A stretch of DNA of 64,000 nucleotides, from assembly GCA_002269645.1 (NCBI GenBank), contig NIVC01000211.1, positions 124,001 through 188,000 on the forward strand, given 5' to 3'. The DNA comes from Macrostomum lignano. Its lineage: Eukaryota. Each line of letters starts with the position of its first letter. Position 1 is the first letter of the stretch. Position numbers and translations under genes: made by a program. The notes under the pieces were generated by a model that ran no database searches, was not told where the DNA came from, and was given only the letters and a program-made list of their open reading frames with translations. Of this stretch, positions 7,711 to 35,000 are shown one piece after another.

Positions 7711-8064
7711 CAATCAATCAATCCACATCCACAATTTCTAATAAAAACTTTAAAGCAAAGAAATACATGTATTGAATACATCCGTACATATATTTTTAGT
7801 CAATAAAGCCAGCAGTAATTGTGTAATTTTGACATTACCTAGTGTGACACGAGTGCGTGGGCATAAAATTGAAAAAAACAAGACTTTTCATTCCAGCTTA
7901 CACCTGCCATGATTTAGAGTAGGCCCTATATGGTTTGAATGCAAAGCAACAGTTATCATTTAGACTGTTTCAAATAAGTGCCAAAAATTCAACTCATTTT
8001 ACTGTTGCATCATTTGCCTATATTAGGAGATTTTATTATAGTTTAGAAAAATAAAGCACTAGAA

Positions 8065-10145
8065 GATGTGTTCTTGAAGTCGAAGGTTGTTGTTATAGTC
8101 AATACCGATGACTATAACAACAAACTCCACAGTATCATCCAAGACCAAACCAAATTCCAGTGCCTGGGCACTCATGACACTGTCACCATGTCGCATCCCA
8201 TCCTCAAAGCCGAACAATCTCTTCAAAATTTCCTCCGCAACCATATCAAACAACACATCGAACCAAACATCTATCAGCGTATCTTACCTAGTGGCAGTCA
8301 ACCCGGACAACTCTACGGGGTTTGTAAAGTCCACAAACCTGACAATCCTCTTAGACCAATTGTCTCCATGGTCAACACCGCCGAATACGAAGTTGCCAAG
8401 TACCTGGATTCTCTTATCAAGCCCTGCATTCCTTCCAATTTCATGTCCAAATCCAACAAAGACTTCCTCAATGACCTTCAAAAGTTCAACCCTACGCTCA
8501 ACAGACTCTCTATGTAGTTTTGATGTTGTTTCTCTCTTCACCAACATCCCCCTTGATCTGGCCATTGACTATGCCACTGAGTTGGTGTAACACGAACCCT
8601 CCCACCATGGCCAAGTCGTCCTTTAGAAAACTCCTGGGCTTTGCTACCTCTGGAATCTTTATGTTTGACAATAAATACTAAAGGCAAGTTGATGGCTGTG
8701 CCATGGGAAGCCCCTTGGCCCCCACTCTGGCGAATGTCTGCTTGGCCCATTGGGAAACCGAAAACTGGATGTCTCTCAACTGTGCCCCCAAATTCTACAG
8801 GCGCTACGTCGACGATACGTTTGCCATCTTTGATCAGGAGCAAAAAATTGATCAGTTCCTCCACGCTCTCAACTCCACTCATAAGAACATAAAATTCATG
8901 GTTGAACATGCTGTTGACCAAAGACTCCCCTTCCTGGACATTGACATTGACTACAGTAAGGAAACCCTCTCCACAAAAGTCTTCCGTAAGAAAAGCTTTA
9001 CCAATCTCATTCTCAACTTCTAAGCCACTTGCCCCAGACAATGGAAAACTGGGCTCGTGAGGTTTTGCTCCATAGAGCTTTCACTACCTGTAACACCTGG
9101 ATCAACTTTGACCGGGAGGTGCAGTTCCTCACCAGACTGTTCCATCAAAATGACTACCCCGTTTGTCTGTCCAAAAAATCGTCAACAAGTTCATCTTGGA
9201 CAAAATCACCAAACAAAAACCTGAGCAATCTGTCACCACTGAAGAATTTGAACCCATTCTGCGTCTCCCCTTCCTCGGACCTCCATCTCTAGCCTTTAAA
9301 AACAGAATGCGTAGGTTATTCTTTGCCTCTTTCAATCGTAACATCCGGGTCGTCTTCCACACGAACAAGATTGGGAACTTTGTTAGCAGATTAAAGTCGC
9401 GTGTTCCTTGTACTCTGCGTGCAGGTGTTGTCTACCAATTTAACTGCTCTGTGGACCAGAGCGTCTCCTACGTGGGGAAAACCAAAAGACACCTACACAC
9501 GAGGATCAGGGAACACTGGCTCAAACCATCTGCTATACAAACTCACCTCCTTGAATGCACTAACTGCAATGACTGCAAACCAGAAGAACACTTTAAAATC
9601 ATTGACCAAAGCCATACTGACGCCAAACTTAGAATTCTCGAGGCCCTGCACATAAAAGCTCAGACCCCGAATCTCAACACCCAATTACAACATAGTGGTG
9701 CAGGTCACGTTCTCCGCGTTTTCTGAACAGTGAGTGACACAGTCGTGCACGCTGTGTACACTTAGCTTGACGTTCAATTACCTAAGCTAGCTACCGCCCC
9801 TGATTCTGCCTTTTGACCACTGGACAAGAATTGTGTACATTAGGTTTAACTTTCATTCTCAATCTATAATTCTCTCTCCTACCTACTATACCTATGTATG
9901 TTGTTAAACTAAAGCCAAGTTGTAATCAATTGTTTTCAATCTTACCCTTCTTACCTGTGTACGTTGCAAAAACCAATATTTAATCAATCGCTTTCAATCT
10001 CAATTTCTCAAATCATTCTAATATAATCCTGACGATGCACCATGGCGTGCGAAACGCGTTGAAGTTGTTAGAAATTGAAATCATATTCAAATGTTGATAT
10101 TAAGCTTTCTATTTATTCTTCTCGCCAAGCGAGCAACTCTACCAG
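8065..10145 (+). mobile_element. Penelope-like retroelement (RT + GIY-YIG), 5'-truncated, with stops and frameshifts
   Basis: Pieces: VVIVNTDDYNNK, PLRPIVS, SFDVVSLFTNIP, DGCAMGSPLAPTLANV, RRYVDDTF, LPFLD, and GIY-YIG GVVYQFNC..YVGKTKRHLHTRIREH..LRILEALHI (9163-9726), followed by an AT-rich 3' region containing a hammerhead-like core. Confidence 0.93.
10024..10066 (+). ncRNA. Minimal hammerhead-ribozyme-like motif of the Penelope element
   Basis: CTGACGA (10029-10035), stem II GCAC/GTGC, GAAA (10051-10054), palindromic AACGCGTT (10053-10060); stem I pairs weakly. Confidence 0.6.
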
Positions 10146-10699
10146 CATAAAACATTGGAGACCTAGAAAAGTAATTTTTTTAAATTGAAAAATATAGGAA
10201 GGTTTGCACTCAATTCATACATAGATCCTATTAAGAGGTTTTTAAAAACACTTAGTTTATGAAATTGGTTCAAGAATAACAAAGTTATTACCATTTTACT
10301 GTGAAAATTTCTTTGACCCTTGTAGTAGGCCTAGGCCTATATTTTTCATCAAGGACTATGACTTATAAATATAGGCCTATAGCCTATATAGGCCTAATAA
10401 TAAAAAAAATATTTGAAAATGCAAGTCAAAAATTGTATGAATGTTTTAAATAAAAAATAACAAAGTCAAAAGTAAATAAAGAAATAGTAAATTTTGTAAA
10501 AGAAAATGTTTTTAATAAAAATATAAAAATCAAATTTCAGGATAAAAATTTTTATTTCAACTTTTTATACATCTAGGCTAGGCCTATAGTATTAAATGTC
10601 ATTTTAGCATATAATACCTTTTATTCATGTTTGTGATTTTTTTCTTTATTTTTAGGTAGACATTTTATGGTAGGCCTAGACATAGTGGCAAGTCTACAA

Positions 10700-11950
10700 A
10701 ATAGAGCACCATATAGGCTTCCAATGGTAGGATGCAGCCTATAATGGCTTGGGCGCATGCCAGCTGTTGATGCTCAATGGACAGGCATATAGCTAGTATC
10801 GTGCCAATGCCCCACCTAAGTCCTGTAGCAATAGTTGGCAACTGCCTAGATGGTAGTTAGTATGCTAGGTATAGGGTCACACCTCGCCTAGTCTATCCCT
10901 ATACTACAATTGCTTAAGGCCACAAGTGGATGGCATTGGGCTGCCATGCAGGAATGGACATTGGCTGCATAATGTTAAAAGGTCAATTGGCTATCTAGCC
11001 AGACCCCTAGGATGATAGGTACTTCTTCAAACAAGAGCAAGGTGCCTCTAATCTAGAGATCAACCTGCTTTTTCTTGCAAGTCTCCCAGGGGTTCCCAGA
11101 CCTTCCAGTTATGGCACAAGGCCTCCTCAGTGTCTAAGGCCAGCTGCAGCTAGGTGGCACAGATGTCAAGGCTCCGTACTGTTGTAAGCAACATTAGTCA
11201 TCTGTGTAGAGGCTAAGCATATTGTCTCTATGAGGTCATTGATGTAAACTAGCTAGAGTATAGGTGCTAGGACACTACCTTGGGGAAGGCCTTTGTGGAA
11301 CACATATTCCTGACTATTGCACTGGCCCTTTTAGATGTGGGTATGGTGGTTGGTGATAAATCCTTGGATCTAGCATAGCATGCACTTGGAGATGGTGAAG
11401 TTTGGCAAGCAGGCATTCTGCCACACCTTATCATAGGTGCAGCTAAAATCCTATCAAGGATTGCCTAGCAAATATGTGCTACCTGCTCCTCAGTGGAATG
11501 GCCGCATTGAAAGCCAGTCTGGGTACCACTGAGGAGCCAGTTGGACTCCAGGTGATGACAGAGCTATTAGAGTACCATCTGCTTAGCCAGCTTAGCAATG
11601 GTGCTGGTCAGTGCAACTGGCTAGTATGACTCCAGTTTGCTACCATTTTCTCCCATTTTGGGATAGGCACTATATGGCTATGCTTCCATTGAGCAAAGCA
11701 GATGCTAGTATGCCAAGTGGCATTAATGAGTCCCAATCCCAACAGTTATTGCCTACTAGTCATTGGCAGGTGTTTTAGCATGCTGTTGTAGACTGCATCT
11801 GGCCCAGGGACCTTGAGTGCATAGAGTGCAACCTGCAGTTCCATTAGCAAGAACAGTGCACAAAAGCCCTGTTCACTATAGTAGCATAGTGTCCACATGG
11901 TGGCATTCGCTTAATGTGTGACTGTGCAGTCCTTTGGACATTGCAGAACC
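10700..11950 (-). mobile_element. Heavily decayed non-LTR retrotransposon (LINE) reverse transcriptase
   Basis: Minus strand gives PGPDAVYNSMLKHL, WKHSHIVPIPK, ALTSTIAKL, QTGF..GHSTEEQV, AYDKVW, GLPQGSVLAPIL*LVYINDL and LYTDD in colinear order, with stops and frameshifts. Confidence 0.85.
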
Positions 11951-12207
11951 CTGGGGATAGAGCTGTATAGTTGGCAAAACAGCTCTGCCTTCTTTAGATT
12001 TATTTGCATAGGTTGCACAAAGGCCTACATGCCCATTTAGGGCCTGTGGATTGTGACACTATTCTTCTGCTTGCCATTCCTCTAATGGCAAGCAACAGGT
12101 AAAAGAGGTCACTTTTGATGTCTATTGATGGTGGCTATTGCTGTTGCTTTGCTTGTTGCTATAGCTATTGCTGCTGTTGCTTTGGCTGCGGCTGTTACTG
12201 CGGCTAT

Positions 12208-13300
12208 TATGAGGGGTGCTTATTAAGTTCCCGAAAAGTTCAGTTCTAATTATTGCATCTGTACGGAATTTTACCTGCAGCAACTGCAGTCTATTATAAC
12301 TTCTCAACATAATTTCCACGCAAATTGGAGCACTTTTGCAGGCACTGGAACCATGCATTGAAGCACCCCCTGAGATCAGCTTTGGTGAAGCTGTCCAGCT
12401 CAGCTTGTAGCGCAAAAACCAGCTCCTCCCTCGAGTCAAAGTGCTTCCCCTCCAGATTTTTCTTTATTCTGGGAAATAGGAAAAAAGTCAGCAGGCACCA
12501 GGTCCAGCAAATATGCCGGATGTGGCTGCTCAACAAGCTGGGTTGCCTGAAGGAATTCCTAGGTCACTTGTGCCCAGTGTGCAGGAGCATTGTCCTGATG
12601 GAGGAAGATGCCTTTGTCAAGCGTCTTTGGCCGCTGTTGTGCAAGCGCCTGCAGGATGCTATTGCGTCAGAAGAAAGTAGCCGCCATCACTCTCCCGAGG
12701 CTGCACTCGCGATGAAATTTGAGAGGAGCATCTTCCTCATTGGTAACGCACTGCCGACTCTACTCTTTGCTCTCTAGGTCATAAAAGTAGACCCAGGTTT
12801 CGTCGCCAATGAGGATGTTATCCACCAACTGTGAGTGGCCTCCATCAAACCTGGCTACCATGAGGTTGGCAAACTCAACTCAGGCTCGCATCTGGTCAGC
12901 GCTAAGCTGGCGGGGTACCTAGCAAGCAGACAGCTTCCTCATGCCAAGGTGCTAGTGCAGGATCTTAATGATAGTGGAATCTGACACCCCAACAAGCTGC
13001 TCCAACCAGTGAATCATCACTCGCTGATCTTCGTCTACATGGCATGAAACAGCAGCAACAACTCCGTCAGACACAGCCAAACTCGGCTGCCCCTCGCAAG
13101 GATCGTTGTCCAGAGTGGCCGAGCCACAGCGGAAGTACGCAAACTACTCATACACCAACTGGGATGATGCTTGATCCTGAAGAGCTTCATGCAGCATCTA
13201 GAGGCAGGTGGCTGCAGAGCTGCCCAGCCAAAACTGTACCAAGATTGCCACTCGCCTGTTGCAGTCAGTCAGCTATGGCAAGGGGGCACTTTTTCAGCCA
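12208..13300 (-). pseudogene. Mariner (Tc1/mariner) transposase pseudogene with one recognisable TIR
   Basis: Minus strand: VYE*F, KLSAC*VPR (WVPR), ILIGDETWVYFYD, LHQDNAPAH, FFLFPRIK, W....KC....GNYVEK. TA-TGAGGGGTGCTTATTAAGT at 12208 resembles a mariner TIR; the other TIR was not found. Confidence 0.88.
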
Positions 13301-15467
13301 AACTTTGGCCACTGCAGCGGATCATTGCGACCAATTAAGCTAAAATTTTACAAGCAAACATAGAACTGCTTCATTTTAAAGAAAACTTTATATGCATGCT
13401 AGTAATAAAACACAGCAGAAAAATACCTAAACTATTCACAGATATTCAATTACAAAAATCCTTATCATGGTTTCTATGGCAGGGAAGAGCTGACAGCTAC
13501 TTGACATCATGAGATACTTATAATTGAGTGACTGCTTGCTATTGAAGAAAGCCCAATTTCAGGGGGTGCTTGCTATTAGAAAGAAAGGCAGGGAATGCTT
13601 GCTATCAGGAGATGATTCCTATTATTGCATCTTTATTGTATGTTTGAATTAAAGTTAAGAATTCAGATAGGGTCTAATTTAGTGATAGTTCCAATTTTGT
13701 TTAGCTGACCTGCATTTTGGGCTTATAAATATGCACAGATACTGGTTTATAAAATATATATACCATTTTATACCAGTATAAAATAACACAAAGGCAATGA
13801 GATGTTGATTAATATCTTGGCTAATATTCTTATATCAATCACTTCATGACATATTTCACTTCATCACATAATAAGTTTTAAAAGTTCTGTATCTTTACTG
13901 TCATAAAATAATGCAAAAGTGAAGCAGAAATGGAATATAAAAAAGAACACAAGTACAATGGACCATGGACGAGCAATACAAAAGATGGGGGGAAATACTC
14001 AGACCTTATTCTAAGAACTAAGTTCCAAAGTTACTGGTAATTATAGTTTAGTACAACTTTAGTGATAGCAATTGAGATTTAAAGAGAAAAGTTTGGCCCA
14101 TGAATAGATTAGGACAGAAGGAAGAGGAAAGAAGGGAGGAAAAAAGAGAAAAGAAAGAAGAGAAGAAAAGAAGAGGAAAAAGAGTGAAAAAAGAGGAAAA
14201 GGAGAAAATGGAAGGAAAAAGAAAAGAAAGGAAAAAAGGAAAATAAAGAGAAAAGAGCTGAAAAGAGACACAAACCTTGAGCAAGCCATATTGTTATTGT
14301 AAAGTTTCAATTGACCCAAGGGCTAGATAAAGTGAGGCTTTATAGCCATTACAAGCTATGGGGGGTGCTCCAAAAGTCCTTTCCCTTTTGAACATAGCTC
14401 TTGCAATACTGTTCCAATTTGAATGCGGTTTTTAACTATAAAAAGATGCACTTTAGCTCAAAAGTTTTGTAATTTGATCATTTTTTCTATCTATTATGGA
14501 CTTATGGTACTTTTAGGTCTAGTTCTTACCAAAATCAAAGGGCATTGCACAATAATATTTGCACTGATTATTACATTAGACATAATTCAAACTTGAGTAT
14601 TTTTTAATTTTGAGGTTAGCATTGATGTGTAGATAGTTCTGTATTAGCAAGGCACTCTTTCAATCATTATATAGCTTTGCTCTGCTAGCATAAAGCCACT
14701 AAGGCATATAGAATACTAGGTAAATGCCATCTTCCAAGTTGCTGTCTGGTGCTTGCATGAAAGGATTGCATTAAGAGGTTTACAATATTAGTTTGTCTCA
14801 GCTTATGGTTTAAAATTGTCACAAAGTAATAATAATATGTCACAATTGCATAGCATAGCAGTGCTCTGTGCACAGAGTTGAAGAGCTAAAAAGCCTTTAG
14901 TAGTACTATCTGAATTCATAGCATTGCTTTCTTTGACCATTTTTGCCTTGCACTTGTGCTAAGGTCTCTATAAAATAGCACCATTTCATCCAGTATCATT
15001 ATTGTTCTCTTGTCATTGTTCATTGTTCATATGCTCTGGTTAATTTAAGTCTAGTTCATACAAGTGCAACACCTAGTCAATTCAATTAAGTGGCCAAGGC
15101 AGGTACACTGCAAAGCTAATCAATCAAACACCAAGAAAAAAGCATGACATATTCAATAATTTTATTATATAACTTGCTTAGGTTCATGCCTAGGTTCTGG
15201 TTTTTAATTCTTCAGTCAAATAAACTGGATCAGTTGTGAGAAGTATGGTCTGATTGTCTTTGTGTTAGATTGTAATGAAAGTCCATGTAACCAGACTGCA
15301 AAATGTCATAATAAGAGAACTAAGATGGAGAGGCTACCACGTCAACTGAAAACATGCAACAAATATACAAAAAGTTGATCACTTAAAAACACAAGGAGAC
15401 TCAAAGAGACAATAAGATGGGTTAGAAGAGTAACAATAATGGGTTACCACGCAAAAAATGATTTCAG

Positions 15468-18348
15468 TCTGCAGCTAATAATCTGTTCAGCCGCTCGCCT
15501 GAAGTTTGCGTACGCGACGCACTTCGAGGCTTAGTTATTGCCGATCCGAGTTTGGCATTGATTGCCAGAACTGGCAGCTCTAGTAGTGAAGGCGTCGGCG
15601 GGGTGGTTATTCGTAGAGAGCCTCGCGGCTTGCCTACAGGCAATCGGGTTCGCGTGATAAGCGGCGGCGGCGCCGGGCATGAGCCTGCCTACGTCGGATT
15701 TGTCGGAGAAGGACTTCTCGACGCTGCTGTGTCGGGTCACGTGTTTGCGTCGCCAGCTCCTAACGACATCTTGGAAGCAATTCGCCAACTGGCTTGTCCT
15801 TCTGGTCTGCTAGTATTGATTATGAACTACACAGGCGATAGATTGAACTTTGGTCTAGCCGCTGCCAGGGCTCGAACTAGCGACCTTCGCTGTCGAATGT
15901 TTGTCTGTGACGATGATGCGTCGATTAAGGATCCGGCACCAGCTGTTGGCCGACGTGGCATTGCTGGCAGCCTGCTGATGATGAAGCTGGCTTGCGGTCT
16001 GGCAGATTCTGGGCTGGATTTAGACTGCATAGTGAATCGGTTGGAAAGTTTAAGGACCCGACTGGCTACTGTGGGTGCCTGCAGGCTGCCGACAGGCGAC
16101 TGGGAGCTCGGGCTGGGGATTCACGGTGAAGCTGGTGTCGGTCTGTTGAAAAGTCATCAAAGCTCCATGGAAGCCGTGGTTGGAGCCGTTGTTAAGAAAC
16201 TACTGGCAGATGAACGCATTGAGAAATCTATGAATAAAGTTAAAAGACAAGAAAGCTCTTCGTCTGCCGCTAGTGCCATGCTAATCAATGGATTAGGCGG
16301 ATTATCGAATTTGGAATTATCTGGAATAGCGTCTGTAGCTTTTGAGACAGTGGCCGCCGTTTCTAACCTACCTGTGCGTCGTTTGTACATCGGCAATTTG
16401 ATGACGTCATTGTCTGCTCCGGGATTTTCCGTTAGTCTACTGTTGCTGCTAGGCCAAGATGATGAAGGCTGGATTCTGGAAACATTGGACTTGCCGGCGC
16501 GAAGGTAGGGGGTTGGAATCTAGTTTTGTTAGGTCAATATCACTATCTGTGGCATGAAAATCCTCCCTGTGAAAACGGTACCGTGAAAAGAGTCGCTACA
16601 GCATACATGCGCAACCTTTGGAATCACTCGGCCGTTTCTATTGGCAACACACATTTAAGTCGCTATTGGCTGAGAGCAGTCACGTGACTACTATTCCGTC
16701 CAATAGCGACTTACATGTGTGTGTTGCCAATAGAAACGGCCGGGTGAATCCCTAGGTTGCGCCCAAGCATGCGCTAGAGTCATTCTAAAGAACTCACTAA
16801 TGAGTGTAGCGTCTCTTGTGACTTTTTTAATGACTTGAACGACTGTATTGCGTAAAATAGTCGCGAAAAATTCGTCTAAGAGACGTTGCGTTAAGCGCTT
16901 AACTTTCTACTCATTCAAGTAGACTAAATAGAGTTGTTACTTTAAATGCGAAATGCGATTCTAATTCATAAAGTAACGCAGATGCGTTCTAATTACGACT
17001 CTTCGCCCCAGAGTCGCAGACAATAAAACGCCTCAAATGGACTCTTCGGCGGCTCTTTGAAGCCTTTTTGTCGACTTGTACTACTGGGACATCTTGTCGT
17101 TTAAGTGTTACCTGCAACGAATCTGAAACGACTCTGGGGCGACGAAAGTCACTCTGGGCCTTGGTACCGTTTTCATCGGGCGTTTTTTGTTGCTATGGAG
17201 ATCCTAATTAGCTGACTGGATTCGAAATCCCAATCTAGTTGCTATAGAAATCCTGATCAGCTGACTGGATTGAAAATTCCAATCTAGTTGCTATGGAAAT
17301 CCTGATCAGCTGACTAGATTGAAAATCCCAATCTAGTTGCTATGGAAATCCTGATCAGCTGACTGGATTGAAAAAATCCCAATCTAGTTGCTATGGGAAT
17401 CCTGATCAGCTGACTGGATTGAAAATCCCAATCTATCTATATCCATAATATCTATATAGATATAGATAAATCTATAAGAGTTCACAGTTTACTCAATGCA
17501 AACCCATTCGAATTTCACTCAGGTGGCCAGCCGCTTCCTCGCCAAGCGTTCTGCGGCCCGATCAACTCGAACTAGCCGCCCTTCCATCTGACCCGACCTC
17601 CGCATCGTCTGACAGCAGCATTCCCTGGCAATCAGCCGAGTCTCTGAGCTCAGCTCGAGCATCACTGAGCGCCGTGGCCGCAGCTCTCATCGATGCCAGA
17701 TCGATTCTGAATCAGCTGGATTCTGTTGGCGGACTTGGAGACGGAGACTGCGGCGATACCATGTACAGGGGAGCGCTTGCTATGCAGAAGTTTGTTGAGC
17801 AGCCTAGCAACGCCATAGTAACGGTTAGTAGCGGGCCTAGGCGGTTGCTAGCTGAGTTATCCAGCCTGGCCCAGAGCGACATGGGCGGCAGTTCCGGAGC
17901 TCTGTTCGGCATCGGCCTGGCAGCTGCAGCCGCTTCGGTCTGTCAGTCACCATTCGATGCACGCAGCGCCATTGCCGCCCTGTCCGCTGCGGCTGGCGCC
18001 ATCTCGGAGGCTGGTCGAGCTCGGCAAGGCGATCGGACAATGCTGGACACTGTGTACGCTTTCTTAGAAGCATTCGATGCCGGCCTATCAGCTGATGAGG
18101 TTTGGCAGAGGCTGCCAAGAGCGGTCAGGCTGGCTCGTGATGGGGCTGTTGCCACGGCTCAGATGAAGCCTCGAGCTGGTCGAGCTGCCTACGTTGGCGC
18201 TGAGCTGTCCTTAACCTCTGAATCCGAAGCTCGACCAGACCCTGGCGCATGGGCCGCTCTGATTATTTTGCGAACTGTTTGCCGAGCTGTTGGAGTCGCT
18301 GTTGAGGACACGGAAGCTGAAGATGCCGCGGTGCTTGGTTCCGGTTAA
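15468..18348 (+). CDS. TKFC: Dihydroxyacetone kinase / triokinase-FMN cyclase (Dak1+Dak2 fusion), 2 exons; start codon not encoded in frame
   Basis: Exon 15468-16504 (ISGGGAGHEPAYVGFVG, VFASP, NYTGDRLNFG, GRRGIAG, ELGLGIHGEAG) and exon 17523-18348 (LNQLDSVGGLGDGDCG, MGGSSGALFG, GDRTMLD, AGRAAYV, DPGA). GT-AG phase-2 join reads ARRWP; 1863 nt in total. Confidence 0.93.
16565..17180. mobile_element. Non-autonomous TIR element in the DAK intron, with an internal long hairpin
   Basis: Ends CCCTGTGAAAACGGTACC and (reverse complement) CCCGATGAAAACGGTACC; internal inverted arms 16609-16669 / 16700-16762; subterminal CGACTC(T)/GAGTCG repeats. Confidence 0.5.
17195..17435. repeat. Minisatellite, about 49-bp unit, about 5 copies
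   Basis: ATCTAGTTGCTATGGAAATCCTGATCAGCTGACTGGATTGAAAATCCCA repeated. Confidence 0.9.
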
Positions 18349-18554
18349 ACTTCCTTATCTAAAGTTTGTTAGAACTCTGATTAAATGTCATTGATTTTTA
18401 TTACCTTTACTTATCATTCAATAAATCACCACACTAATCGATATTTTAGCTTTTGCGGTGGCAGTTTAACACTCTTATAAGATTCTTCTCCTTTATTCAT
18501 TGAGAAATCGAGCATGGGTTTCTTCTCTTCAAGTGCCCTGGAGTCCTCCAGTGT

Positions 18555-19055
18555 ACACTGACAGCCCGTCCCTCTATCCCCCTATGTACACTGACAGCCC
18601 TGCCCCTCTATCCTCCAATGTACACTGACAGCCCTGCCCCTCTATCCCCCAATGTACACTGACAGCGCTGCCCCTCTATCCCCCAATGTACACTGACAGC
18701 CCTGCCCCTCTATCCCCCAATGTACACTGATAGCCCTGCCCCTCTTTCCTTTAATGTACACTGATAGCCCTGTCCCTCTATCCCTCAATGTACATTGACA
18801 GCCCTGCCCCTCTATCTCTCAATGCACACTGATAGCCCTGTCCCTCTACCCCCTAGTGTACACTGACAGCCCTGCCCCTCTATCCCCCAATGTACACTGA
18901 CAGCCCTGTCCCTCTATCCCTCAATGTACACTGATAGCCCTGTCCCTCTATCCCTCAATGTACATTGACAGCCCTGCCCCTCTATCTCTCAATGCACACT
19001 GATAGCCCTGTCCCTCTACCCCCTAGTGTACACTGAAAGCCCCGCCACTCTATAC
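18555..19055. repeat. Minisatellite, 34-bp unit, between DAK and kanadaptin
   Basis: TGTACACTGACAGCCCTGCCCCTCTATCCCCCAA, about 14 copies. Confidence 0.92.
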
Positions 19056-19133
19056 TAGTGTAATGCTTATTAATTTCTTTCAAAACATTTCAGCTTTCAC
19101 CTGCCATCAATTTATTAATAAAAATCGAAAAAA

Positions 19134-22100
19134 ATGTCATCAATTGATTCGGCTGACACAGAATCCAAGCAATCTGCAGCCGCATCAGCAGAGCCGGCAG
19201 ATGCAAAAGATTCAGAAACCGCTTCAGTTGAAGAACCGAGAAAACCTGTGGTGTTTAAAATGCCGCAGATTTCTGCAGCTCCGGTGTTGAATAAGAAATT
19301 ATTGAAACAGCCGCAGCAGAAGCAGCTGCCAGCAGTAGAAGCAGTCGAGACAGAAACTCAATCAGATAATTCTTCTGATGTCAATCAAACTGAACTCGAA
19401 CCGAAGCAAAATAAAGTCACGCAGCAGCAACAGGAGGGCTCGTCATATATTCAACCGCATTGGGGTGGCCGCTGTCAAGGACCCTACTCTCTGCAGGTGC
19501 TCAAATCTGGTGTAGAAGTTCAGAATTTGGATTTGCAAGGCCGGTCCTGTCTGACTATTGGTCGCCAGAGCGACTGCGACCTGCGCCTGGAGCACCCGTC
19601 ATTGTCCAGGTGGGTTGTCTGGTGGCTGGTGTATGAGAATCATCATTTAATAATCTGCTATGATAATCCATGATAATCCTTGATATGATAATGATAATCT
19701 CCATGATTATCATAATCTATGATAATCCTTTGATAATCCAATATGAGAATCATCATTTGACAATCCACTTTGAGAATCGCCCTTTGATAATCCACTTTGA
19801 GAATTGATAATCTACTATGAGAATTGATAATCCACTATTTAGAATCGATAATCCACTATTGAGAATTGATAATCCACTATTGAGAATTGATAATCCACTA
19901 TTTAGAATTGATAATCCACTATGAGAATTGATAATCCACTATTGAGAATTGATAGTCCACTATTGAGAAATGATAATCCACTATTGAGAATTGATAATCC
20001 ACTATGAGAATTGATAATCCACTATTGAGAATTGATAATCCACTATTGAGAATTGATAATCCACTATTGAGAATTGATAATCCACTATTGAGAATCGATA
20101 ATCCACTATTGAGAATCGATAATCTACTATGAGAAATGATAATCCACTATGAGAAATGATAATCTACTATGATAATTGATAATCCACTATGAGAAATGAT
20201 AATCCACTATGAGAATTGATAATTCACTATTGAGAATCGATAATCCACTATGAAAATTGATAATCCACCATTGAGAATTGATAATCCACTATTGAGAATT
20301 GATAATCCACTATGAGAAATGATAATCCACTATGAGAACTGATAATCCACTATCAGAAATGATAATCTACTATGAGAAATGATAATCCACTATTGAGAAT
20401 TGATAATCCACTATTGAGAATTGATAATCCACTATGAGAATTGATAATCCACTATGAGAATTGATAATCCACTATGAGAATTGATAATCCACTATGAGAA
20501 TTGATAATCCACTATGAGAAATGATAATCCACTATGAGAAATGATAATCTACTATGAGAAACGATAATCCACTATTGAGAATTGATAATCCACTATGAGA
20601 ATCGCCCTTCACAATGCCAAATGCAGGCACCACGCAGTGATGCAGTACAGCGGTGCGGCAGACTCAGCATCTGAGTCTGAGCAGGCGGACTCCACTCGCT
20701 ATCCATCAGGCTGGTACCTGATAGACCTGGGCAGCACACACGGCACTCTGGTTAACAAAGTTAAGCTGCCTCCGCAACAGTACAGACGATTAAGAGTTGG
20801 TCACGTGATCAGGCTGGCCGGCAGCACCCGGCTGCTGGTTCTGCAAGGTCCGGAGAGCGATCAGGAGGCTGAGTCTGAGCTCACCTATACCCAGCTGAAG
20901 GAGAGGAGGGATAGGTAATGCTTTGCCAGCATTTCATTTCTAAACTAGACGATTTTTTGTGTACGATATGCTTTTCCGTTTGTTGTTAATCTAATGGATA
21001 TTTTCGGGGTTTTTTGTTTATCTAATGAAATATTTTCCGAATTTTTTTGTTTATCTGATGGACTAATTTCCGGGTTTTTGTTTATCTGATGAAATATTTT
21101 CCGGGTTTTTTTGTTCATCTGATTGAATATAATGCGGGGTTTTTGTTTATCTACTAGAATATTTTCATGGGTTTTGGATGAAAAAATGTTCGGTTTTTAT
21201 GTTTGTTAATGTAAAGAAAGATTTCCGGGTTTATATCTAATGACTAGTTTCCGAGTTAATTGCAAGCGTAATCAAAAAAGCCTTACAACCAGCCAGTCGA
21301 TTTTATTCAACTCTAAATTCATGAATCAAATTTACGTTTGAGCCTACTGTGTAAGTAGTATAGATATGTCTTGTTTCAAATTCTAATATTATTTTTTTGT
21401 TTTCTTTCCACTTTTAGGCGGCGCATTGAACAGCAGATCAAGCAGAATGCCGAGCTGCAGTCACCCTCCGAAAGGGATGGCAACAGCGGCGGCGGTGGCG
21501 GCTGTACCTGGGGCTTCGCTGAGGATGCAGTTGATGAGGCTGAGGAGTCTGCTGAGCAGCAGCTGTCTGGCAAGGATGGGTAAGTTACTGTAGGCCTCTG
21601 TGATACTGCTCAGTGCCCTGCCAGATCCTCAGTTGCTGGACCAGCCTCCCAGATCCTCAGTTGCTGGGCCAGCCTCTTAGATTATCAGTTGCTGGGCCAG
21701 CCTCCTAGATTATCAGTTGCTGGGCTAGCCTCCCAGATCCTCAGTTGCTGGGCCAGCCTCCCAGATCCTCAGTTGCTGGGCCAGCCTCCCAGATCCTCAG
21801 TTGCTGGGCCAGCCTCCCAGATCCTCAGTTGCTGGGCCAGCCTCCCAGATCCTCAGTTGCTGGGCCAGCCTCCCAGATTCTCAGTTGCTGGGCCAGCCTC
21901 CCAGATTCTCAGTTGCTGGGCCAGCCTCCCAGATCCTCAGTTGCTGGGCCAGCCTCCCAGATCCTCAGTTGCTGGGCCAGCCTCCCAGATCCTCAGTTGC
22001 TGGGCCAGCCTCCCAGATCCTCAGTTGCTGGACCAGCCTCCCAGATCCTCAGTTGCTGGGCCAGCCTCCTAGATTATCAGTTGCTGGGCCAGCCTCCCAG

Positions 22101-23771
22101 ATCCTCAGTTGCTGGGCCAGCCTCCCAGATCCCCAGTTGCGCCTCGAGTGCATATACCTTGTGATGAAGCTGGCCAAAACAGGTCAATAAATATTTTTCT
22201 TCTTTGAGAAAATTATCATCTCAGGTGTGACTGTTTATTCAACTCCATCGTGCAAGCGGCACATTTTATTATTCTCTTTACGTGCCGAAAGCAGCAAAAC
22301 AGACGCCTTTGACTGGAGAAAAGATTTATCCATACAAAAACATATTGAAATCCGCAGCTGCTCCCGTCCTCTTTTGATGCTGAATAGATGCAGGTTGTTT
22401 GCAGAATTTCATAAAGATGACCGGGTGTTGACAGTGCAGTTTGATGAAAATATTGGGAAAGAGTGTGATGTTAAGCAGAGGCGGAACTGTTTAAATAGCG
22501 AAAATTTTCTTTCCTCCAGATGCTCCCATCTTATCGATTTGGAAATCTTTTATTCCCTAATCACTCCCAGATCCCCAGTTTCTGGCATAGATTCACTCCC
22601 AGATCCCCAGTTTCTGGCATAGAGTCACTCCCAGATCCCCAGTTTCTGGCATAGAGTCACTCCCGGATCCCCAATTTGGGAGAGAGTCACTCCCGGATCC
22701 CCAATTTGGGATAGAGTCAGTCCCGGATCCCCAATTTGGGATAGAGTCAATCCCGGATCCCCAATTTGGGAGAGAGTCACTCCCGGATCCCCAATTCGGG
22801 AGAGAGTCACTCCCGGATCCCCAATTTGGGATAGAGTCAGTCCCGGATCCCCAATTTGGGATAGAGTCAGTCCCTGATCCCCAATTTGGGATAGAGTCAC
22901 TCCCTGATCCCCAATTTGGGTTAGAGTCACTCCCTGATCCCAATTTGGGATAGAGTCACTCCCGGATCCCCAATTTGGGATAGAGTCACTCCCGGATCCC
23001 CAATTTAGGATAGAGTCACTCCCTGATCCCCAATTTGTGGAATAAAGTCGCTTCCAGATCCCCAATTTGGGATAGAGTCACTCAAGGATCCTCAAGTTGG
23101 GATAGAGTCACTCAAGGATCCCCAAGTTGGGATAGAGTCACTCCCGGATCCCCAATTTGGGAGTGAGTCACTCCCTGATGGCCTGATCCCCAATTTGGGA
23201 AAGAATCGCTCCCAGATCCCCTGTTTGGGATAAAGTCACTCCCAAATCCCAAATTTGTGGGATAAAGTCACTCCCAGATCCCCAGTTGGTGAGATAAATA
23301 TCCCTAATTTCCAGGGATATCCCAAATCCATTTCAAATCCCATATCCCACAGCTTAACCCTCAACCTCACCTCTCGGTTCCCCAGCTTCAACTCATTTGT
23401 ACTTTTGTACATTTGTACTCTATCTTTGTACTCGGACACGCGCAGCTTTCGGCCGTCCAATATGCAGGTGCGCTTCGGCCTGGGTCGGTAGCGATAATCC
23501 GGATGCTGCTCCATGTGCACCCGCGACAACCGCGACTGCTCCTCGTAGAATGGCTGCTTCTCCTCGGCTGTCATGGCCTTCCACTTGGCCCCGAGAATCT
23601 TCGAGATGCTGGAGTTGTGCATGTCCGGGCAGGCCTTGAGAATCTTGCGCCGCTCCTCCCGGGCCCACACCATGAAGGCGTTCATCGGGCGCTTGACGTG
23701 ATGGCTGCCGCGGCTCGACTGGGACTGCTGGTTGCCGGGCTTGCTTGATGCCAGCTTGCGGGGAGTCTGTG

Positions 23772-23813
<42 letters not shown>

Positions 23814-26785
23814 TCTGTTGCTTCTGCTGCTGCTGTGGCGGCTTGGGAGACGATTTCGAATGCGTCGATGGCGGCGAATGAGGCGACAGACTCTGCGAGG
23901 CGTCAGCTTCCGACAAGGAAATGTCCGGCATGTCGCCCAGAATGGCGGATGGATTCTGGTGATGATGACTGAGCAGTCCTCAGTTGCTGGACCAGCCTCC
24001 CAGATCCTCAGTTGCTGGGCCAGCCTCCTAGATTATCAGTTGCTGGGCCAGCCTCCCAGATCCTCAGTTGCTGGGCCAGCCTCCCAGATCCCCAGTTGCC
24101 CCTCGAGTGCATATACCTTGTGATGAAGCTGGCCAAAACAGGTCAATAAATATTTTTCTTCTTTGAGAAAATTATCATCTCAGGTGTGACTGTTTATTCA
24201 ACTCCATCGTGCAAGCGGCACATTTTATTATTCTCTTTACGTGCCGAAAGCAGCAAAACAGACGCCTTTGACTGGAGAAAAGATTTATCCATACAAAAAC
24301 ATATTGAAATCCGCAGCTGCTCCCGTCCTCTTTTGATGCTGAATAGATGCAGGTTGTTTGCAGAATTTCATAAAGATGACCGGGTGTTGACAGTGCAGTT
24401 TGATGAAAATATTGGGAAAGAGTGTGATGTTAAGCAGAGGCGGAACTGTTTAAATAGCGAAAATTTTCTTTCCTCCAGATGCTCCCATCTTATCGATTTG
24501 GAAATCTTTTATTCCCTAATCACTCCCAGATCCCCAGTTTCTGGCATAGATTCACTCCCAGATCCCCAGTTTCTGGCATAGAGTCACTCCCAGATCCCCA
24601 GTTTCTGGCATAGAGTCACTCCCGGATCCCCAATTTGGGAGAGAGTCACTCCCGGATCCCCAATTTGGGATAGAGTCAGTCCCGGATCCCCAATTTGGGA
24701 TAGAGTCAATCCCGGATCCCCAATTTGGGAGAGAGTCACTCCCGGATCCCCAATTCGGGAGAGAGTCACTCCCGGATCCCCAATTTGGGATAGAGTCAGT
24801 CCCGGATCCCCAATTTGGGATAGAGTCAGTCCCTGATCCCCAATTTGGGATAGAGTCACTCCCTGATCCCCAATTTGGGTTAGAGTCACTCCCTGATCCC
24901 AATTTGGGATAGAGTCACTCCCGGATCCCCAATTTGGGATAGAGTCACTCCCGGATCCCCAATTTAGGATAGAGTCACTCCCTGATCCCCAATTTGTGGA
25001 ATAAAGTCGCTTCCAGATCCCCAATTTGGGATAGAGTCACTCAAGGATCCTCAAGTTGGGATAGAGTCACTCAAGGATCCCCAAGTTGGGATAGAGTCAC
25101 TCCCGGATCCCCAATTTGGGAGTGAGTCACTCCCTGATGGCCTGATCCCCAATTTGGGAAAGAATCGCTCCCAGATCCCCTGTTTGGGATAAAGTCACTC
25201 CCAAATCCCAAATTTGTGGGATAAAGTCACTCCCAGATCCCCAGTTGGTGAGATAAATATCCCCAATTTCCAGGGATATCCCAAATCCATTTCAAATCCC
25301 ATATCCCACAGCTTAACCCTCAACCTCACCTCTCGGTTCCCCAGCTTCAACTCATTTGAGCTGTCAGCGGCAGCTCAGACTGCTCACTCGGAGGCCTACT
25401 CAGCGGACCCGCTGAAGTTCCTACGCGGCTGGTACGATCGGCAGGGACTCGAGGCGCCCAGCTTCAAAGTCGAAGCTCCAACCAGCAGCGGCGAAGTGGA
25501 CGAAATCGACGTACGCGCCGGTCGACTCCTCTGCTGCCGACTTGAACTGCCCGTCGACGGCCCCGACGGTCGGCCAGAAACCGCCGAGGCGCCGATGCCG
25601 CCGGGCACACGAAAACGCGACGCCATCGCAGCCTGCGCTCTGGCCGCCTGCCAACTGCTGGATCGAATGGGCGAACTGGACGCCGATGCTGGCAGCGGGT
25701 CGGCCGGCAGCAGTCGGGAGCGTCGGCTTCGCCAGCTGGCCGAGAACGACTTCTACGAGGAGGACGAGGACGCCTACCTGGACCGCACTGGCCAGTTGGA
25801 GGCGAAACGGCGAGCGCGGATGGCTGCCGCCGCTGCTGCCGCTGAAGGTGCTTCGAAGGCGCCGTCGGGTTCCACGGCGGTGACCTTCGACCAGCTGACG
25901 GCTCGTTGCCAGGCGCTGGACTCCGAGATCGCCGATCTGGAAACTCAGTTAGAAGCGGCCGCGGCTGAGTCTGCCAGCCGGAAGAAGTCGCAGCAGCAGC
26001 AACAACATCAAGCAAATTCAACTTCCAACCAGCTGGACGAGCTGGAAGAGTACATGCGCACTATTAAATCTGGCGGGCTGGATCAGCGAACTCGAACTCA
26101 GATGCGATTGAGACTCATGGCGGCTAAGAAGGAGGCGGCGCTGGCCCACCGGATGCTGGAGAAGGCTCGCCCAGCTGATCTGTCCAGTGTCGGTGCGGCG
26201 ACGAAAGCTCGAGAGCAGCGTCGGATTCCAATGACGGCGCCAACGAGTCAGGTGAAGCAGCCCGAGATGCAGGCATTCACCGGGGAGGAAGTTGAGTCGG
26301 ATGAGCAGCCGGTTGTGAAAGATGACGCTGAGCTTGCTGCTCAACACTCTGCTAATAGTAAAGTTGATGAAGACATGCCGCAGGCGGAACAGCCGCTAGA
26401 AGCGCCGACTGCAACAGCAGAGTCCGGCTCAGCCAAGGTTGAGAAGTTTGCTCCGATTCGTCTGCAGGCGTCTGCAAAGACCAGCTCGTTAGTAGCGGCA
26501 ACAAAGAAGCCTGGCAGTGCCGCTACAAAGATTGCCCGTCCAGCCTGGCTTGATGAGGCTGACGAGACTCCAGCGGCTGTCGCAGAGTCGTCTTTGGCGG
26601 CAAATTCTAAGAAACGAAAGAGGAAAAATCCGCCGCCACCGCCGCCGCCTCCGTCCCGGCCTCATCAGCTCGATGACGTTACTGGAGGCTATGACGCAAC
26701 AGATCCAGACTATGCCCTGTGGTTGCCGCCCTCTGATCAAACTGGTGACGGATCCACTGCGCTCAATGAAAAACTGGGATATTAA
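19134..26785 (+). CDS. SLC4A1AP: Kanadaptin (FHA domain + dsRBD-like region + coiled coil), 4 exons, about 788 aa
   Basis: Exons 19134-19609, 20627-20914, 21418-21579, 25345-26785, all phase-2 GT-AG joins. FHA motifs [22 protein letters not shown] and [11 protein letters not shown]; [14 protein letters not shown]; [13 protein letters not shown]; C-terminal [27 protein letters not shown] is characteristic. Confidence 0.93.
19665..20605. repeat. Minisatellite, 20/21-bp unit, filling kanadaptin intron 1
   Basis: GAGAATTGATAATCCACTAT(T) repeated. Confidence 0.93.
21622..22140 (+). repeat. 28-bp minisatellite (family also at 23977-24095, 53365-53812 and 55495-57308)
   Basis: CCTCAGTTGCTGGGCCAGCCTCCCAGAT, about 18 copies. 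Confidence 0.93.
22555..23290. repeat. 30-bp minisatellite (duplicated at about 24514-25250)
   Basis: TCACTCCCGGATCCCCAATTTGGGATAGAG repeated. Confidence 0.9.
23423..23977 (-). pseudogene. Copied fragment of the SoxD HMG exon (source 32880-33413)
   Basis: Near-identical to 32880-33413 except a CAG tract 7 codons longer and 2 SNPs; contains the complete HMG box; minus-strand ORF 23931-23236. Confidence 0.93.
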
Positions 26786-32025: not shown

Positions 32026-35000
32026 TCAGTACTCCCCGCCGCTGCTGAAATCTCCCTCATCCTCTGCGTCGATCAGCATGGCGCCGCCGCCAGCATCAGA
32101 GTCGGCTTCGTCTTCGACGTCAATTTGGATTTGCCGTTCCTGATCGGCGGCTGTCGCGTCGCGTTGGACGTCACGAATTCCTGCAAACTGCCGCTGATGC
32201 TGCTCGAAGTGACTCAATGTGACGTTTGAGTCCTCTGGGATGGTAACAAATGGAGTGATAGATCAACGCTCAGATCACTGAGCCTCATCAGCTGTTTGTG
32301 ATCTCACTAAAATCAACTAACTGCGCATCGTTGTGATTGACACTCGCAAGGTCACTCTTTTCTATCAGCTAACTTCATTTGTTCATTAAATGGCTTTTAT
32401 ATGCTCATTGTCATTCTCTCTTCTTTCTTTCTGTCACTCTTCGGTCAGCACTCTGTCACTCTTCCACGCACTCTTTTTGTCCCTCTGCCTATCACTGTCT
32501 CTACCTATCACTCTATCTGTCACTCTGCCTGTCACTCTATCTGTCACTCTGCCTGTCACTTTATCTGTCACTCTGCCTATCACTCTATCTGTCACTCTGC
32601 CTGTCACTTTATCTGTCACTCTGCCTATCACTCTATTTGTCTCAATTTATTCATCTGTCACACTCCCCCCGTCACTCACCCGCTGTTCCACCCGAGCCGG
32701 TCACTCCGGTCATCGAACCCACAGTCGACGCCGCCATCCACAGCTGCTGCTGCTGCTGCTGCTGCTGTTTCTGCTGCAGCTTGAGTCCCAGGCCAGCCAC
32801 CGCCGAAGAAGGCGCGGCTGTCGCGGCCGGCGCCGCTGCTGCAGCACTGGGGGAGCTCTTGCCCCGACCTTTCACCAGGTCTTTGTACTCGGACACGCGC
32901 AGCTTTCGGCCGTCCAATATGCAGGTGCGCTTCGGCCTGGGTCGGTAGCGATAATCCGGATGCTGCTCCATGTGCACCCGCGACAACCGCGACTGCTCCT
33001 CGTAGAACGGCTGCTTCTCCTCGGCTGTCATGGCCTTCCACTTGGCCCCGAGAATCTTCGAGATGCTGGAGTTGTGCATGTCCGGGCAGGCCTTGAGAAT
33101 CTTGCGCCGCTCCTCCCGGGCCCACACCATGAAGGCGTTCATCGGGCGCTTGACGTGATGGCTGCCGCGGCTCGACTGGGACTGCTGGTTGCCGGGCTTG
33201 CTTGATGCCAGCTTGCGGGGAGTCTGTGGCTGCTGCTGCTGTTGCTGCTTCTGTTGCTTCTGCTGCTGCTGTGGCGGCTTGGGAGACGATTTCGAATGCG
33301 TCGATGGCGGCGAATGAGGCGACAGACTCTGCGAGGCGTCAGCTTCCGACAAGGAAATGTCCGGCATGTCGCCCAGAATGGCGGATGGATTCTGGTGATG
33401 CTGACTGAGCAGTGAGTGATGATGTTGCTGCTGCTGCTGCTGCTGCTGCTGGATGAGCTGCAAATTTGGTATCGATAGAGTTTAGGTTGCCATGCCAAAC
33501 TAGATTCGTAGAAGCTTTATTAAAGTAGCTATTTCTTAGAAAATTTTAATCCTCACCTGCACAGTGGGCTGTTGGTTGTAGAGGCCCAGACTTCCAGGAG
33601 GCAGCGACAGACCGTGAGCTGCCGCTGCGGCTAGCAGAAACTCCTGCTGCTGTTGCTGCTGCTGCTGCTGCCCGGCAGTGACTGCAGGCAGACTAAAATT
33701 TGTTTAAATTTGTTTTAAAATATTTTGTTGACTTCGTTGACTTTGTCCAAACTAGTTTCTTTTCCAAGCTTAAATAATTTATTTGAAATGAAATCTGTTT
33801 TTTAAATCACCGCCTTTCCGAAACTTACTCAAGTACAAATATCCCAATTCCAAATCTTCACTTTTCAAATATCCCTTTCCAAATCTCCTTATTCCAAATC
33901 TCCCATTCCAAATCTCCCATTCCAAATCTCCCATTCCAAATCTCCTTATTCCAAATCTCCCCATTCCAAATCTCCCATTCCAAATCTCCTTTTTCCAAAT
34001 CTCCCATTCCAAATCTCCTTATTCCAAATCTCCCCATTCCAAATCTCCCATTCCAAATCTCCCATTCAAAATCTCCCCATTCCAAATCTCCCATTCCAAA
34101 TCTCCCCTTTCAAAATCTCCCCTTTCCAAATCTCCCCTTTCCAAATATCCCATTCCAAATCTCCCCATTCCAAATCTCCCATTCCAAATCTCCCCTTTCC
34201 AAATCTCCCCTTTCCAAATATCCCATTCCAAATCTACCCAATACCGAATCTTCCCATTCCAAATCTCCTATTCCTAATCTCCCTTTTCCAAAACTCCTCA
34301 AATCTCTCCATTCCAAATCTCCCCTTTCCAAATCTCCTTAAATCTCCCCTTTTTAAATATAGTTAATAATTTTTCAAATTCTTAAACATCCGAAAAATCC
34401 CAAACTATATAACTTTATTATCAAACCTTAAAAATATGTAAAAATTCCGCAAAAAAGGTCTACATGCAAAGAAAGAGACAAGAACAGCCACTTTGTAATC
34501 GCTAAGCTGATGACTCACCTCAGCTGACTAAAGGCTGCCTGCTGCTGTTGCTGCTGCTGCTGCTGCAGAGGTGGCGCAGGCAGCGTTAGCCCAGCTGCAG
34601 CCAGCAGACTTGCCACCTGTTGCTCCTGCTGGCTGGCCAATGAAATCTTGCCGCCCGTAGTCAAGGCGACCGACTCGTCGCCCCCCTGACAGCAGCGGGT
34701 GGTGGCCGTCCGAAGACCCAGCCGGGGCTTCTTGGACAAATCCTGTTGGCAATTGGAGATGAGAGTTGGGCAGAATCTCCCGTTAGCAGCTTAGTCACAA
34801 AGGGGTCGAGCCAACCCCCCCCCATCCCCCAAGTAGTGATTGCGCAACTTTCCAAACCGAAAGGAAGAATCGAAAGAGGAAAGAAGGGAAACTCGAGAAG
34901 ACGCGTCGCGTCAGGGAGCTCTGCATTCGCTACAGCACAATGGTGTGCTACGTAGGAACTTCGTGGTGAATTTTAAAGAAATTTTTGGTTGGTTGTATGT

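What the first reader, a model, noticed from the sequence alone, without database searches (positions are those of the whole stretch)
15455..15540. DAK/TKFC lacks an in-frame ATG and starts at a TTTCAG acceptor: start codon probably supplied by the spliced leader
Seen: the DAK frame opens after TGA (15459-15461), and ATTTCAG|TCT GCA GCT AAT (15467/15468) is a canonical acceptor in phase 0. The first in-frame ATG lies far inside the Dak1 domain; the nearby ATG at 15458 is out of frame (M-I-S-V-C-S-*). Adding AUG gives MSAANNLFSRSPEVCVRDALRGL, which lines up by eye with the TKFC N-terminus (MTSKKLVNS..CADDALAGL). Established: flatworm spliced leaders end in AUG, which can act as the initiator. 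Inference: this enzyme can only be translated after SL trans-splicing.
Basis: partly seen in the sequence, partly recalled or inferred. Interest (0 to 1): 0.75.

Follow-up and report, generated by a model that had tools for sequence, protein, structure and literature searches.

The report
Flatworm enzyme gene borrowing its start codon
A triokinase (DAK/TKFC) gene of the flatworm Macrostomum lignano has no start codon of its own and almost certainly gets its AUG from the spliced leader added by trans-splicing, a mechanism known in flatworms since 2006, so this is a clean example, not a discovery.

Summary
The window is Macrostomum lignano. The DAK/TKFC reading frame opens after TGA 15459-61. 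It begins at TCT 15468, directly behind TTTCAG 15462-67. ATG 15458 is out of frame. The first in-frame ATG is codon 119, inside the Dak1 domain.

TTTCAG fits the published M. lignano trans-splice acceptor motif [T/C]TNCAG. The species' single 35-nt spliced leader ends in ATG and holds no other ATG. Joined at 15468 it gives MSAANNLF..., which starts within 1-2 residues of other eukaryotic DAK proteins.

Two further genomic copies in GenBank assembly GCA_002269645.1 have the identical AAAAAATGATTTCAG|TCTGC junction. Their RNA-seq-based CDS models, both flagged "partial", start at exactly that T. Three more UniProt models also start at SAAN. This argues against a 1-nt assembly error. The catalytic motifs are intact and dN/dS is about 0.3, so it is not a pseudogene. 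No upstream ATG exon stands out above chance.

I could not see junction reads, so trans-splicing at this site is inferred. "Can only be translated" is slightly too strong.

The mechanism is established (Cheng et al. 2006), so novelty and interest are low.

The parts
15458..15478 (+). Out-of-frame ATG and its 6-codon ORF (M-I-S-V-C-S-stop). It lies partly in the outron and would be cut apart by trans-splicing at 15467/15468.
   Evidence: sequence read directly
15459..15461 (+). In-frame TGA that closes the DAK frame two codons upstream of the acceptor.
15462..15467 (+). TTTCAG, the putative SL trans-splice acceptor (3' splice site between 15467 and 15468). It matches the M. lignano trans-acceptor motif [T/C]TNCAG.
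   Evidence: motif from PMC8629364; identical in L001 and L002
15468..16504 (+). DAK/TKFC exon 1 (Dak1 domain). It starts at codon TCT (Ser) with no ATG. The donor is GTAGGG at 16505.
   Evidence: the same model on L001 and L002 reproduces GenBank PAA53362.1 and PAA62824.1 exactly
15469..15474 (+). Second acceptor-like CTGCAG, 7 nt downstream. It is present only in this copy (CTGCTG in L001 and L002). An SL joined here would give a 20-residue out-of-frame ORF.
15822..15824 (+). First in-frame ATG (codon 119). Starting here would delete the GGGAGHEP motif of Dak1.
16505..17522 (+). The single intron (GT...CAG). It contains a 49-bp x5 tandem array at 17189-17435.
17523..18348 (+). DAK/TKFC exon 2 (linker plus Dak2 domain), with stop TAA at 18346-18348.
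18420..18425 (+). AATAAA, the likely polyadenylation signal of the DAK mRNA.
   Evidence: sequence read directly; function inferred

Best explanation
This is one genomic copy of the Macrostomum lignano triokinase/FMN cyclase (dihydroxyacetone kinase, DAK/TKFC) gene. It has two exons (15468-16504 and 17523-18348) and encodes 620 codons with no initiator.

The primary transcript starts somewhere upstream. Its 5' part (the outron) is removed when the 35-nt spliced leader (SL) is trans-spliced onto the TTTCAG acceptor at 15467/15468. The SL ends in AUG and has no other AUG. So the mature mRNA reads ...UUGCAUG|UCUGCAGCU..., and the first AUG met by a scanning ribosome is in frame and directly abuts Ser-1. 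The product is MSAANNLFSRSPEV..., a full-length Dak1+Dak2 enzyme.

Without trans-splicing, the in-frame TGA at 15459 and the absence of any in-frame AUG before codon 119 leave no normal way to make a functional protein.

Shown here:
- the sequence anatomy;
- the identity of the junction in three copies;
- database gene models that start at the acceptor;
- intact catalytic motifs;
- an N-terminus homologous to that of other DAK proteins.

Inferred: that the SL is really joined at 15468, and that the SL AUG is the codon used.
For: 1. Species and SL. The protein is 98% identical to M. lignano A0A1I8J9Z0. The M. lignano SL ends in ATG (PMC8629364). Wiberg et al. 2023 call that final ATG a translation start codon in Macrostomum (PMC10468722). 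The SL has one ATG and no in-frame stop.

2. Acceptor. TTTCAG matches [T/C]TNCAG, the top motif at 21,754 M. lignano SL sites. It is the only AG in 15300-15700 that fits the motif and gives an SL-AUG ORF through Dak1.

3. Independent gene models. GenBank PAA53362.1 and PAA62824.1 (assembly GCA_002269645.1) are both labelled partial. Their CDS begins at locus position 8001, which is the T right after ATGATTTCAG. That annotation sets the 5' ends of trans-spliced genes from peaks of SL-containing reads, and calls ORFs with TransDecoder (PMC5730564). A 5'-partial ORF beginning at Ser, rather than at the F or Q codons before it, implies a transcript model starting at 15466-15468. Three further UniProt models also start at SAAN.

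4. No assembly error. The window, L001 and L002 share AAAAAATGATTTCAGTCTGC exactly. Nearby they differ by substitutions and a 10-bp indel.

5. A functional gene. The Dak1 and Dak2 Pfam hits are strong. GGGAGHEP, YTGDRLNF, GIHGE, GDGDCG, GGSSG, GDRTMLD and PDPGA are all conserved. dN/dS is about 0.3 against L001 and L002.

6. Complete N-terminus. With Met added, the protein starts within two alignment columns of other animal, plant and Capsaspora DAK proteins. Query residue 13 aligns with residue 10 of Citrobacter DAK 1UN9.

7. Precedent. Cheng et al. [quoted passage not shown] This is as summarised in PMC9851317 and cited in PMC12582326 and PMC5832876.
Against: - No RNA read, cDNA or RNA-derived contig showing the SL-exon junction could be retrieved. 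A protein search with the SL-translated prefix returned nothing, but it also missed known relatives, so it is uninformative.
- That the GenBank 5' boundary comes from SL reads is deduced from the published pipeline. It was not read from a per-gene record.
- The acceptor has no obvious polypyrimidine tract (aaaaaatgatttcag).
- The Kozak context of the SL AUG is weak (U at -3, U at +4).
- In this copy only, a second CTGCAG 7 nt downstream could compete and give a non-productive mRNA.
Confidence: 0.85

Rival explanations
1. A conventional 5' exon carrying an ATG lies further upstream and is cis-spliced to the 15467/15468 acceptor. The gene models are simply truncated.
For: The acceptor could serve cis- as well as trans-splicing. 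In parasitic flatworms acceptors are often shared between the two (PMC12582326). One phase-0 candidate exists, ATG 11163-11183|GTAAGC, 4.3 kb upstream.
Against: One consensus-donor candidate in 6 kb is no more than the control phases give (2 and 2). Neither GenBank copy has an upstream exon, and no gene is called within 8 kb upstream in L002. The protein needs no extra N-terminal residues. With a single Met it already starts where homologues start.
Confidence: 0.06
2. The mRNA is not trans-spliced here, or not always, and translation starts at a near-cognate codon such as CTG (codon 6, 15483-85) or at internal ATG codon 119.
For: In-frame CTG, TTG and ATT codons lie in the first 30 codons. Non-AUG initiation is documented in many eukaryotes (PMC9851317).
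Against: It is unnecessary once the SL supplies an AUG. Starting at codon 119 would remove the conserved GGGAGHEP motif. The out-of-frame ATG at 15458 would capture scanning ribosomes on an unspliced leader. The gene models end precisely at the AG rather than running upstream.
Confidence: 0.05
3. It is an artefact or a dead gene: a 1-nt assembly error (an extra T in TTT 15462-64 would put ATG 15458 in frame as M-I-Q-S-A-A), or a pseudogene that lost its start.
For: Deleting one T would indeed restore a frame from ATG 15458 (sequence logic). M. lignano carries several redundant copies, and dN/dS between L001 and L002 is about 0.8, on few changes.
Against: Three separately assembled copies have the identical ATGATTTCAG. 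The 620-codon frame is open in all of them, with every catalytic motif kept. dN/dS of the window copy against the others is about 0.3.
Confidence: 0.03

Closest known systems
SL-AUG-initiated mRNAs of flatworms (Cheng, Cohen, Ndegwa & Davis 2006, J Biol Chem 281:733; called 'slORFs' in PMC9851317)
   Same: The spliced leader ends in AUG. The recipient exon lacks its own initiator. The SL AUG is in frame and directly precedes the conserved coding sequence. The gene is monocistronic or first in its unit, with an outron.
   Different: The documented cases are in Schistosoma mansoni. Here the host is the free-living, early-branching Macrostomum lignano, and the junction and its translation are inferred, not demonstrated.
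M. lignano SL trans-spliced genes (Wudarski et al. 2017, PMC5730564; Ustyantsev & Berezikov 2021, PMC8629364)
   Same: The acceptor motif is [T/C]TNCAG. It is a conserved gene with a human homologue, and that class is enriched among trans-spliced genes (69.9% conserved). The 5' boundary of the gene model lies at the acceptor.
   Different: Those papers do not discuss which genes depend on the SL AUG. Most trans-spliced genes have their own ATG downstream of the acceptor, as the neighbouring FHA gene does.
Eukaryotic two-domain ATP-dependent dihydroxyacetone kinase / triokinase-FMN cyclase (human TKFC; Citrobacter freundii DAK, PDB 1UN8/1UN9)
   Same: The Dak1 and Dak2 domains sit on one chain. 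The conserved motifs are kept, and identity to animal and plant enzymes is 35-39% over more than 90% of the length.
   Different: The genome encodes no initiator codon. There are a Ser/Gly-rich insert after residue 35 and a longer acidic C-terminal tail.

Membership tests
SL-AUG-initiated (slORF) genes of flatworms | The organism has an SL RNA whose leader ends in AUG. | tested here: met
   The species is identified as M. lignano. The published 35-nt SL ends in ATG (PMC8629364; PMC10468722). The SL gene itself is not in this window.
SL-AUG-initiated (slORF) genes of flatworms | The 5' end of the mature mRNA is an SL trans-splice junction at this acceptor. | tested here: inconclusive
   The support is indirect. 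The site matches the motif. Five database gene models start exactly at the acceptor, and the two GenBank models are flagged partial. No junction read or cDNA could be retrieved.
SL-AUG-initiated (slORF) genes of flatworms | There is no genomic in-frame AUG between the acceptor and the conserved domain, and the frame is closed upstream. | tested here: met
   TGA lies at 15459-61, and the first in-frame ATG is codon 119.
SL-AUG-initiated (slORF) genes of flatworms | The SL AUG is in frame with the ORF and is the first AUG of the mRNA. | tested here: met
   SL plus exon gives a 347-residue ORF to the end of exon 1, which continues in exon 2. The SL has a single ATG.
SL-AUG-initiated (slORF) genes of flatworms | The protein is actually initiated at the SL AUG. 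| not testable with these tools
   This needs ribosome profiling, N-terminal proteomics or a reporter assay.
Dihydroxyacetone kinase / TKFC family | Dak1 (PF02733) and Dak2 (PF02734) domains are present on one polypeptide. | tested here: met
   Dak1 scores 248.5 bits (E 9.9e-74). Dak2 scores 122.5 bits (E 2.2e-35).
Dihydroxyacetone kinase / TKFC family | The conserved substrate- and nucleotide-site motifs are kept (GGGSGHEP, YTGDRLNF, GIHGE, GDGDCG, GGSSG, DRT, PDPGA). | tested here: met
   All are invariant or nearly invariant columns in the 13-sequence alignment. The protein also aligns along PDB 1UN9.
Dihydroxyacetone kinase / TKFC family | The protein has triose kinase or FMN cyclase activity. 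| not testable with these tools
   An enzyme assay of recombinant protein is required.

The most novel reading that the evidence does not exclude
Dependence on the SL AUG may be a regulated switch rather than a passive quirk. DAK protein output in M. lignano would then be set by the efficiency and site choice of trans-splicing. In this copy, the window-specific second acceptor (CTGCAG 15469-74) would divert part of the transcripts into a non-productive 20-codon ORF, which would give copy-specific attenuation. More broadly, housekeeping genes without their own AUG in an early-branching flatworm would help explain why the terminal AUG is kept in flatworm SLs.
Probability: 0.12. Interest if true: 0.4.

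Novelty: new member of a known kind. Interest (0 to 1): 0.22.

Why it matters
The practical value is for annotation. M. lignano CDSs such as PAA53362.1 and PAA62824.1 are deposited as "partial" and lack Met. In fact they are complete once the SL AUG is counted. Pipelines that trim the SL including its ATG will systematically mislabel such genes. Pipelines that demand an ATG will truncate them to an internal Met, here losing 118 residues and a catalytic motif.

Biologically, the case extends the Schistosoma precedent to a free-living macrostomid. This fits the idea that reliance on the SL AUG is old and helps to maintain that AUG. It does not open a new question.

Tried and rejected
- Protein search for an RNA-derived junction contig. 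I searched the 5.8-billion-protein collection with the SL-translated prefix VSYCEDSIYCM joined to the N-terminus. It gave 5 candidates and none scored. Known relatives were also missed, so this negative result carries no weight.
- Exact look-up of UniRef-only P0001: not on record. The NCBI members P0121 and P0122 did give loci.
- Per-gene trans-splicing status in the literature. No paper mentions Mlig021613 or Mlig026051. The held supplements of Wudarski 2017 contain no DAK or TKFC entry.
- Wasik 2015 (PNAS) and Cheng 2006 (JBC) are not held. Cheng 2006 is therefore cited through PMC9851317, PMC12582326 and PMC5832876.
- SL RNA gene in the window: none within 3 mismatches. There are no Rfam hits at gathering score.
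- Upstream ATG exon scan of 9500-15467: 98 phase-0 ATG...|GT combinations, but only one has a GT[AG]AG donor, which equals the background. Rejected as unsupported.
- 1-nt indel hypothesis: rejected on three identical copies.
- Pseudogene hypothesis: rejected on the open frame, conserved motifs and dN/dS.
- I ran no further search on a repeat, because the chance of a result was low.
Full report
**What is in the sequence.** Reading 14800-16600 and translating from 15459 confirms each coordinate in the finding.
- TGA lies at 15459-15461.
- It is followed by TTT CAG (15462-15467), then TCT GCA GCT AAT AAT CTG... from 15468.
- ATG 15458-15460 overlaps the TGA. It is in another frame and reads M-I-S-V-C-S-stop.
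- The open frame runs to a GT donor at 16505 and resumes after a CAG acceptor at 17523. It ends at TAA 18346-18348.
- That makes 620 codons with no initiator. The first in-frame ATG is codon 119, at 15822.
- Pfam finds Dak1 (248.5 bits) in exon 1, covering residues 46-327, and Dak2 (122.5 bits) in exon 2.

**Whose genome it is.** The two-exon protein is 98% identical over its full length to Macrostomum lignano triokinase/FMN cyclase A0A1I8J9Z0. It is 93% identical to a second M. lignano entry. Everything else is 39% identical or less (animals, plants, Capsaspora). The window is therefore M. lignano, a free-living flatworm.

**The spliced leader (SL).** M. lignano uses one 35-nt SL, CGGTCTCTTACTGCGAAGACTCAATTTATTGCATG, on roughly 30-39% of its genes (PMC8629364; PMC5730564). 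Its only ATG is the terminal one, and no stop lies in that frame. The strongest motif at 21,754 M. lignano SL acceptor sites is [T/C]TNCAG, positioned at the junction. TTTCAG at 15462-67 fits it. Such hexamers occur at about 0.24% of positions in this window. I appended ATG behind every AG between 15300 and 15700. Only 15467/15468 both matches the motif and gives an ORF running through Dak1.

**Independent copies and annotation.**
- The cluster of the best hit holds two GenBank proteins. They are PAA53362.1 (BOX15_Mlig021613g2) and PAA62824.1 (BOX15_Mlig026051g5), both named "partial".
- Their loci in assembly GCA_002269645.1 were retrieved as L001 and L002. They are collinear with the window at about 96-98% identity.
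- The annotated CDS starts at locus base 8001. In the alignment this is the T right after ...AAAAAATGATTTCAG.
- Transferring my exon coordinates to L001 and L002 reproduces both GenBank proteins exactly.
- All five database models (P0001, P0121, P0122, P0123, P0002) begin S-A-A-N.
- The Mlig_3_7 annotation cuts transcripts at peaks of SL-containing reads after trimming the SL. It then calls ORFs with TransDecoder (PMC5730564).
- A 5'-partial ORF that begins at Ser, and not at the preceding Phe or Gln codons, requires a transcript model whose first base is 15466-15468. That is the acceptor. This step is my deduction. I could not view a per-gene SL track.

**Rivals.**
- *Assembly error.* Deleting one T from TTT would put ATG 15458 in frame. 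But the window, L001 and L002 share the 20-nt junction exactly, while they differ nearby by substitutions and a 10-bp indel.
- *Pseudogene.* The frame is open in all copies and every hallmark motif is conserved (GGGAGHEP, YTGDRLNF, GIHGE, GDGDCG, GGSSG, GDRTMLD, PDPGA). Against L001 the window copy has 17 synonymous and 15 non-synonymous codon changes. Against L002 it has 15 and 12. With 491 synonymous and 1369 non-synonymous sites, dN/dS is about 0.3.
- *Upstream ATG exon.* In 6 kb upstream only one ATG-ORF ends in phase 0 at a GT[AG]AG donor (11163-11183). The two control phases give two each. GenBank annotates no upstream exon, and no gene is called within 8 kb upstream in L002.
- *Internal or non-AUG start.* Codon 119 would remove a conserved Dak1 motif. 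Near-cognate codons exist (CTG at codon 6) but are not needed.

**Is the N-terminus complete?** In a 13-sequence alignment the flatworm Ser sits at column 2. The initiator Met of Latimeria and Capsella DAK is at column 1. That of oyster and bat TKFC is at column 3, and that of Daphnia is at column 4. Against Citrobacter DAK (PDB 1UN9), query residue 13 pairs with chain residue 10. One added Met therefore gives a normal-length N-terminus.

**Mechanism.** Shown: the anatomy, the conservation of the junction, and gene models that start at the acceptor. Inferred: the outron is replaced by the SL at 15468. The SL AUG, 33 nt from the cap and the first AUG on the mRNA, then initiates MSAANNLF.... Removal of the Met before Ser is expected from general knowledge and was not tested. 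Without trans-splicing, the out-of-frame ATG 15458 and the in-frame TGA prevent normal synthesis.

**Comparison with what is known.** Cheng et al. 2006 (J Biol Chem 281:733) showed that the 3'-terminal AUG of the flatworm SL serves as initiator. [quoted passage not shown] I take this from the summary in PMC9851317 and the citations in PMC12582326 and PMC5832876. For Macrostomum, Wiberg et al. 2023 label the SL's final ATG a translation start codon (PMC10468722). This locus is thus another member of a known class in a species where the class is expected. The gene's dependence on the SL AUG has not been spelled out in the papers I could search.

**Verdict.** Novelty is low: this is a new member of a known kind. 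The main use is to correct "partial" annotations.

Noticed in passing
window 18420-19136: The DAK gene and the downstream FHA-domain gene may form an operon. The layout is AATAAA at 18420, a 34-bp x15 tandem array at 18544-19053, TTTCAG at 19088-93, and the FHA gene's own ATG at 19134. The repeat-adjusted spacing is about 140 nt, near the ~100-bp operon mode reported in PMC8629364. An SL joined at 19094 would open a 19-codon out-of-frame uORF overlapping that ATG. The TTTCAG and ATG are conserved in L001, which has a 1-nt indel between them.
   Followed up: partly
window 15469-15474: A second acceptor-like CTGCAG sits 7 nt inside exon 1. It exists only in this copy. L001 and L002 have CTGCTG, a synonymous GCA/GCT change. 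If used, the SL AUG would read a 20-residue out-of-frame peptide.
   Followed up: partly
window 8087-10148: A block of about 2 kb holds ORFs of 149 to 187 residues (ORFs 8068-9726) that look reverse-transcriptase-like by eye. It is present here and in L002 but replaced by about 110 bp in L001. It is probably a polymorphic retroelement insertion upstream of DAK.
   Followed up: no
L001 8001-10766 (BOX15_Mlig021613g2): This copy carries R60W and G77R, the latter in the conserved YVGFVGEG stretch. dN/dS between L001 and L002 is about 0.8 (11 non-synonymous and 5 synonymous changes). This hints at relaxed constraint among redundant copies of this hidden polyploid.
   Followed up: partly
window 22227-22622 and 24186-24581; 23236-23931(-) and 32672-33463(-): A segmental duplication is present. 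Two 131-residue ORFs are identical. Two minus-strand ORFs share an HMG-box (SOX-like by eye...[17 protein letters not shown]...) preceded by poly-Q. They are embedded among 28-30-bp tandem arrays.
   Followed up: no
window 16505-17522: The DAK intron holds a 49-bp x5 tandem array (17189-17435). Its donor is GTAGGG (GTAGAG in L002), which departs from the common GT[G/A]AG.
   Followed up: no
window 59382-59906 (-): A 174-residue ORF starts with its own ATG (MDISLHTVRAILILDNDG...). By eye it resembles coatomer subunit zeta. It is an example of a neighbouring conserved gene that does not need the SL AUG.
   Followed up: no
tool behaviour: An 89-residue query that is about 90% identical to P0001 over 78 residues returned only 5 word-sharing candidates and no hit. 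Negative results of the word-indexed protein search with short queries should not be trusted.
   Followed up: no
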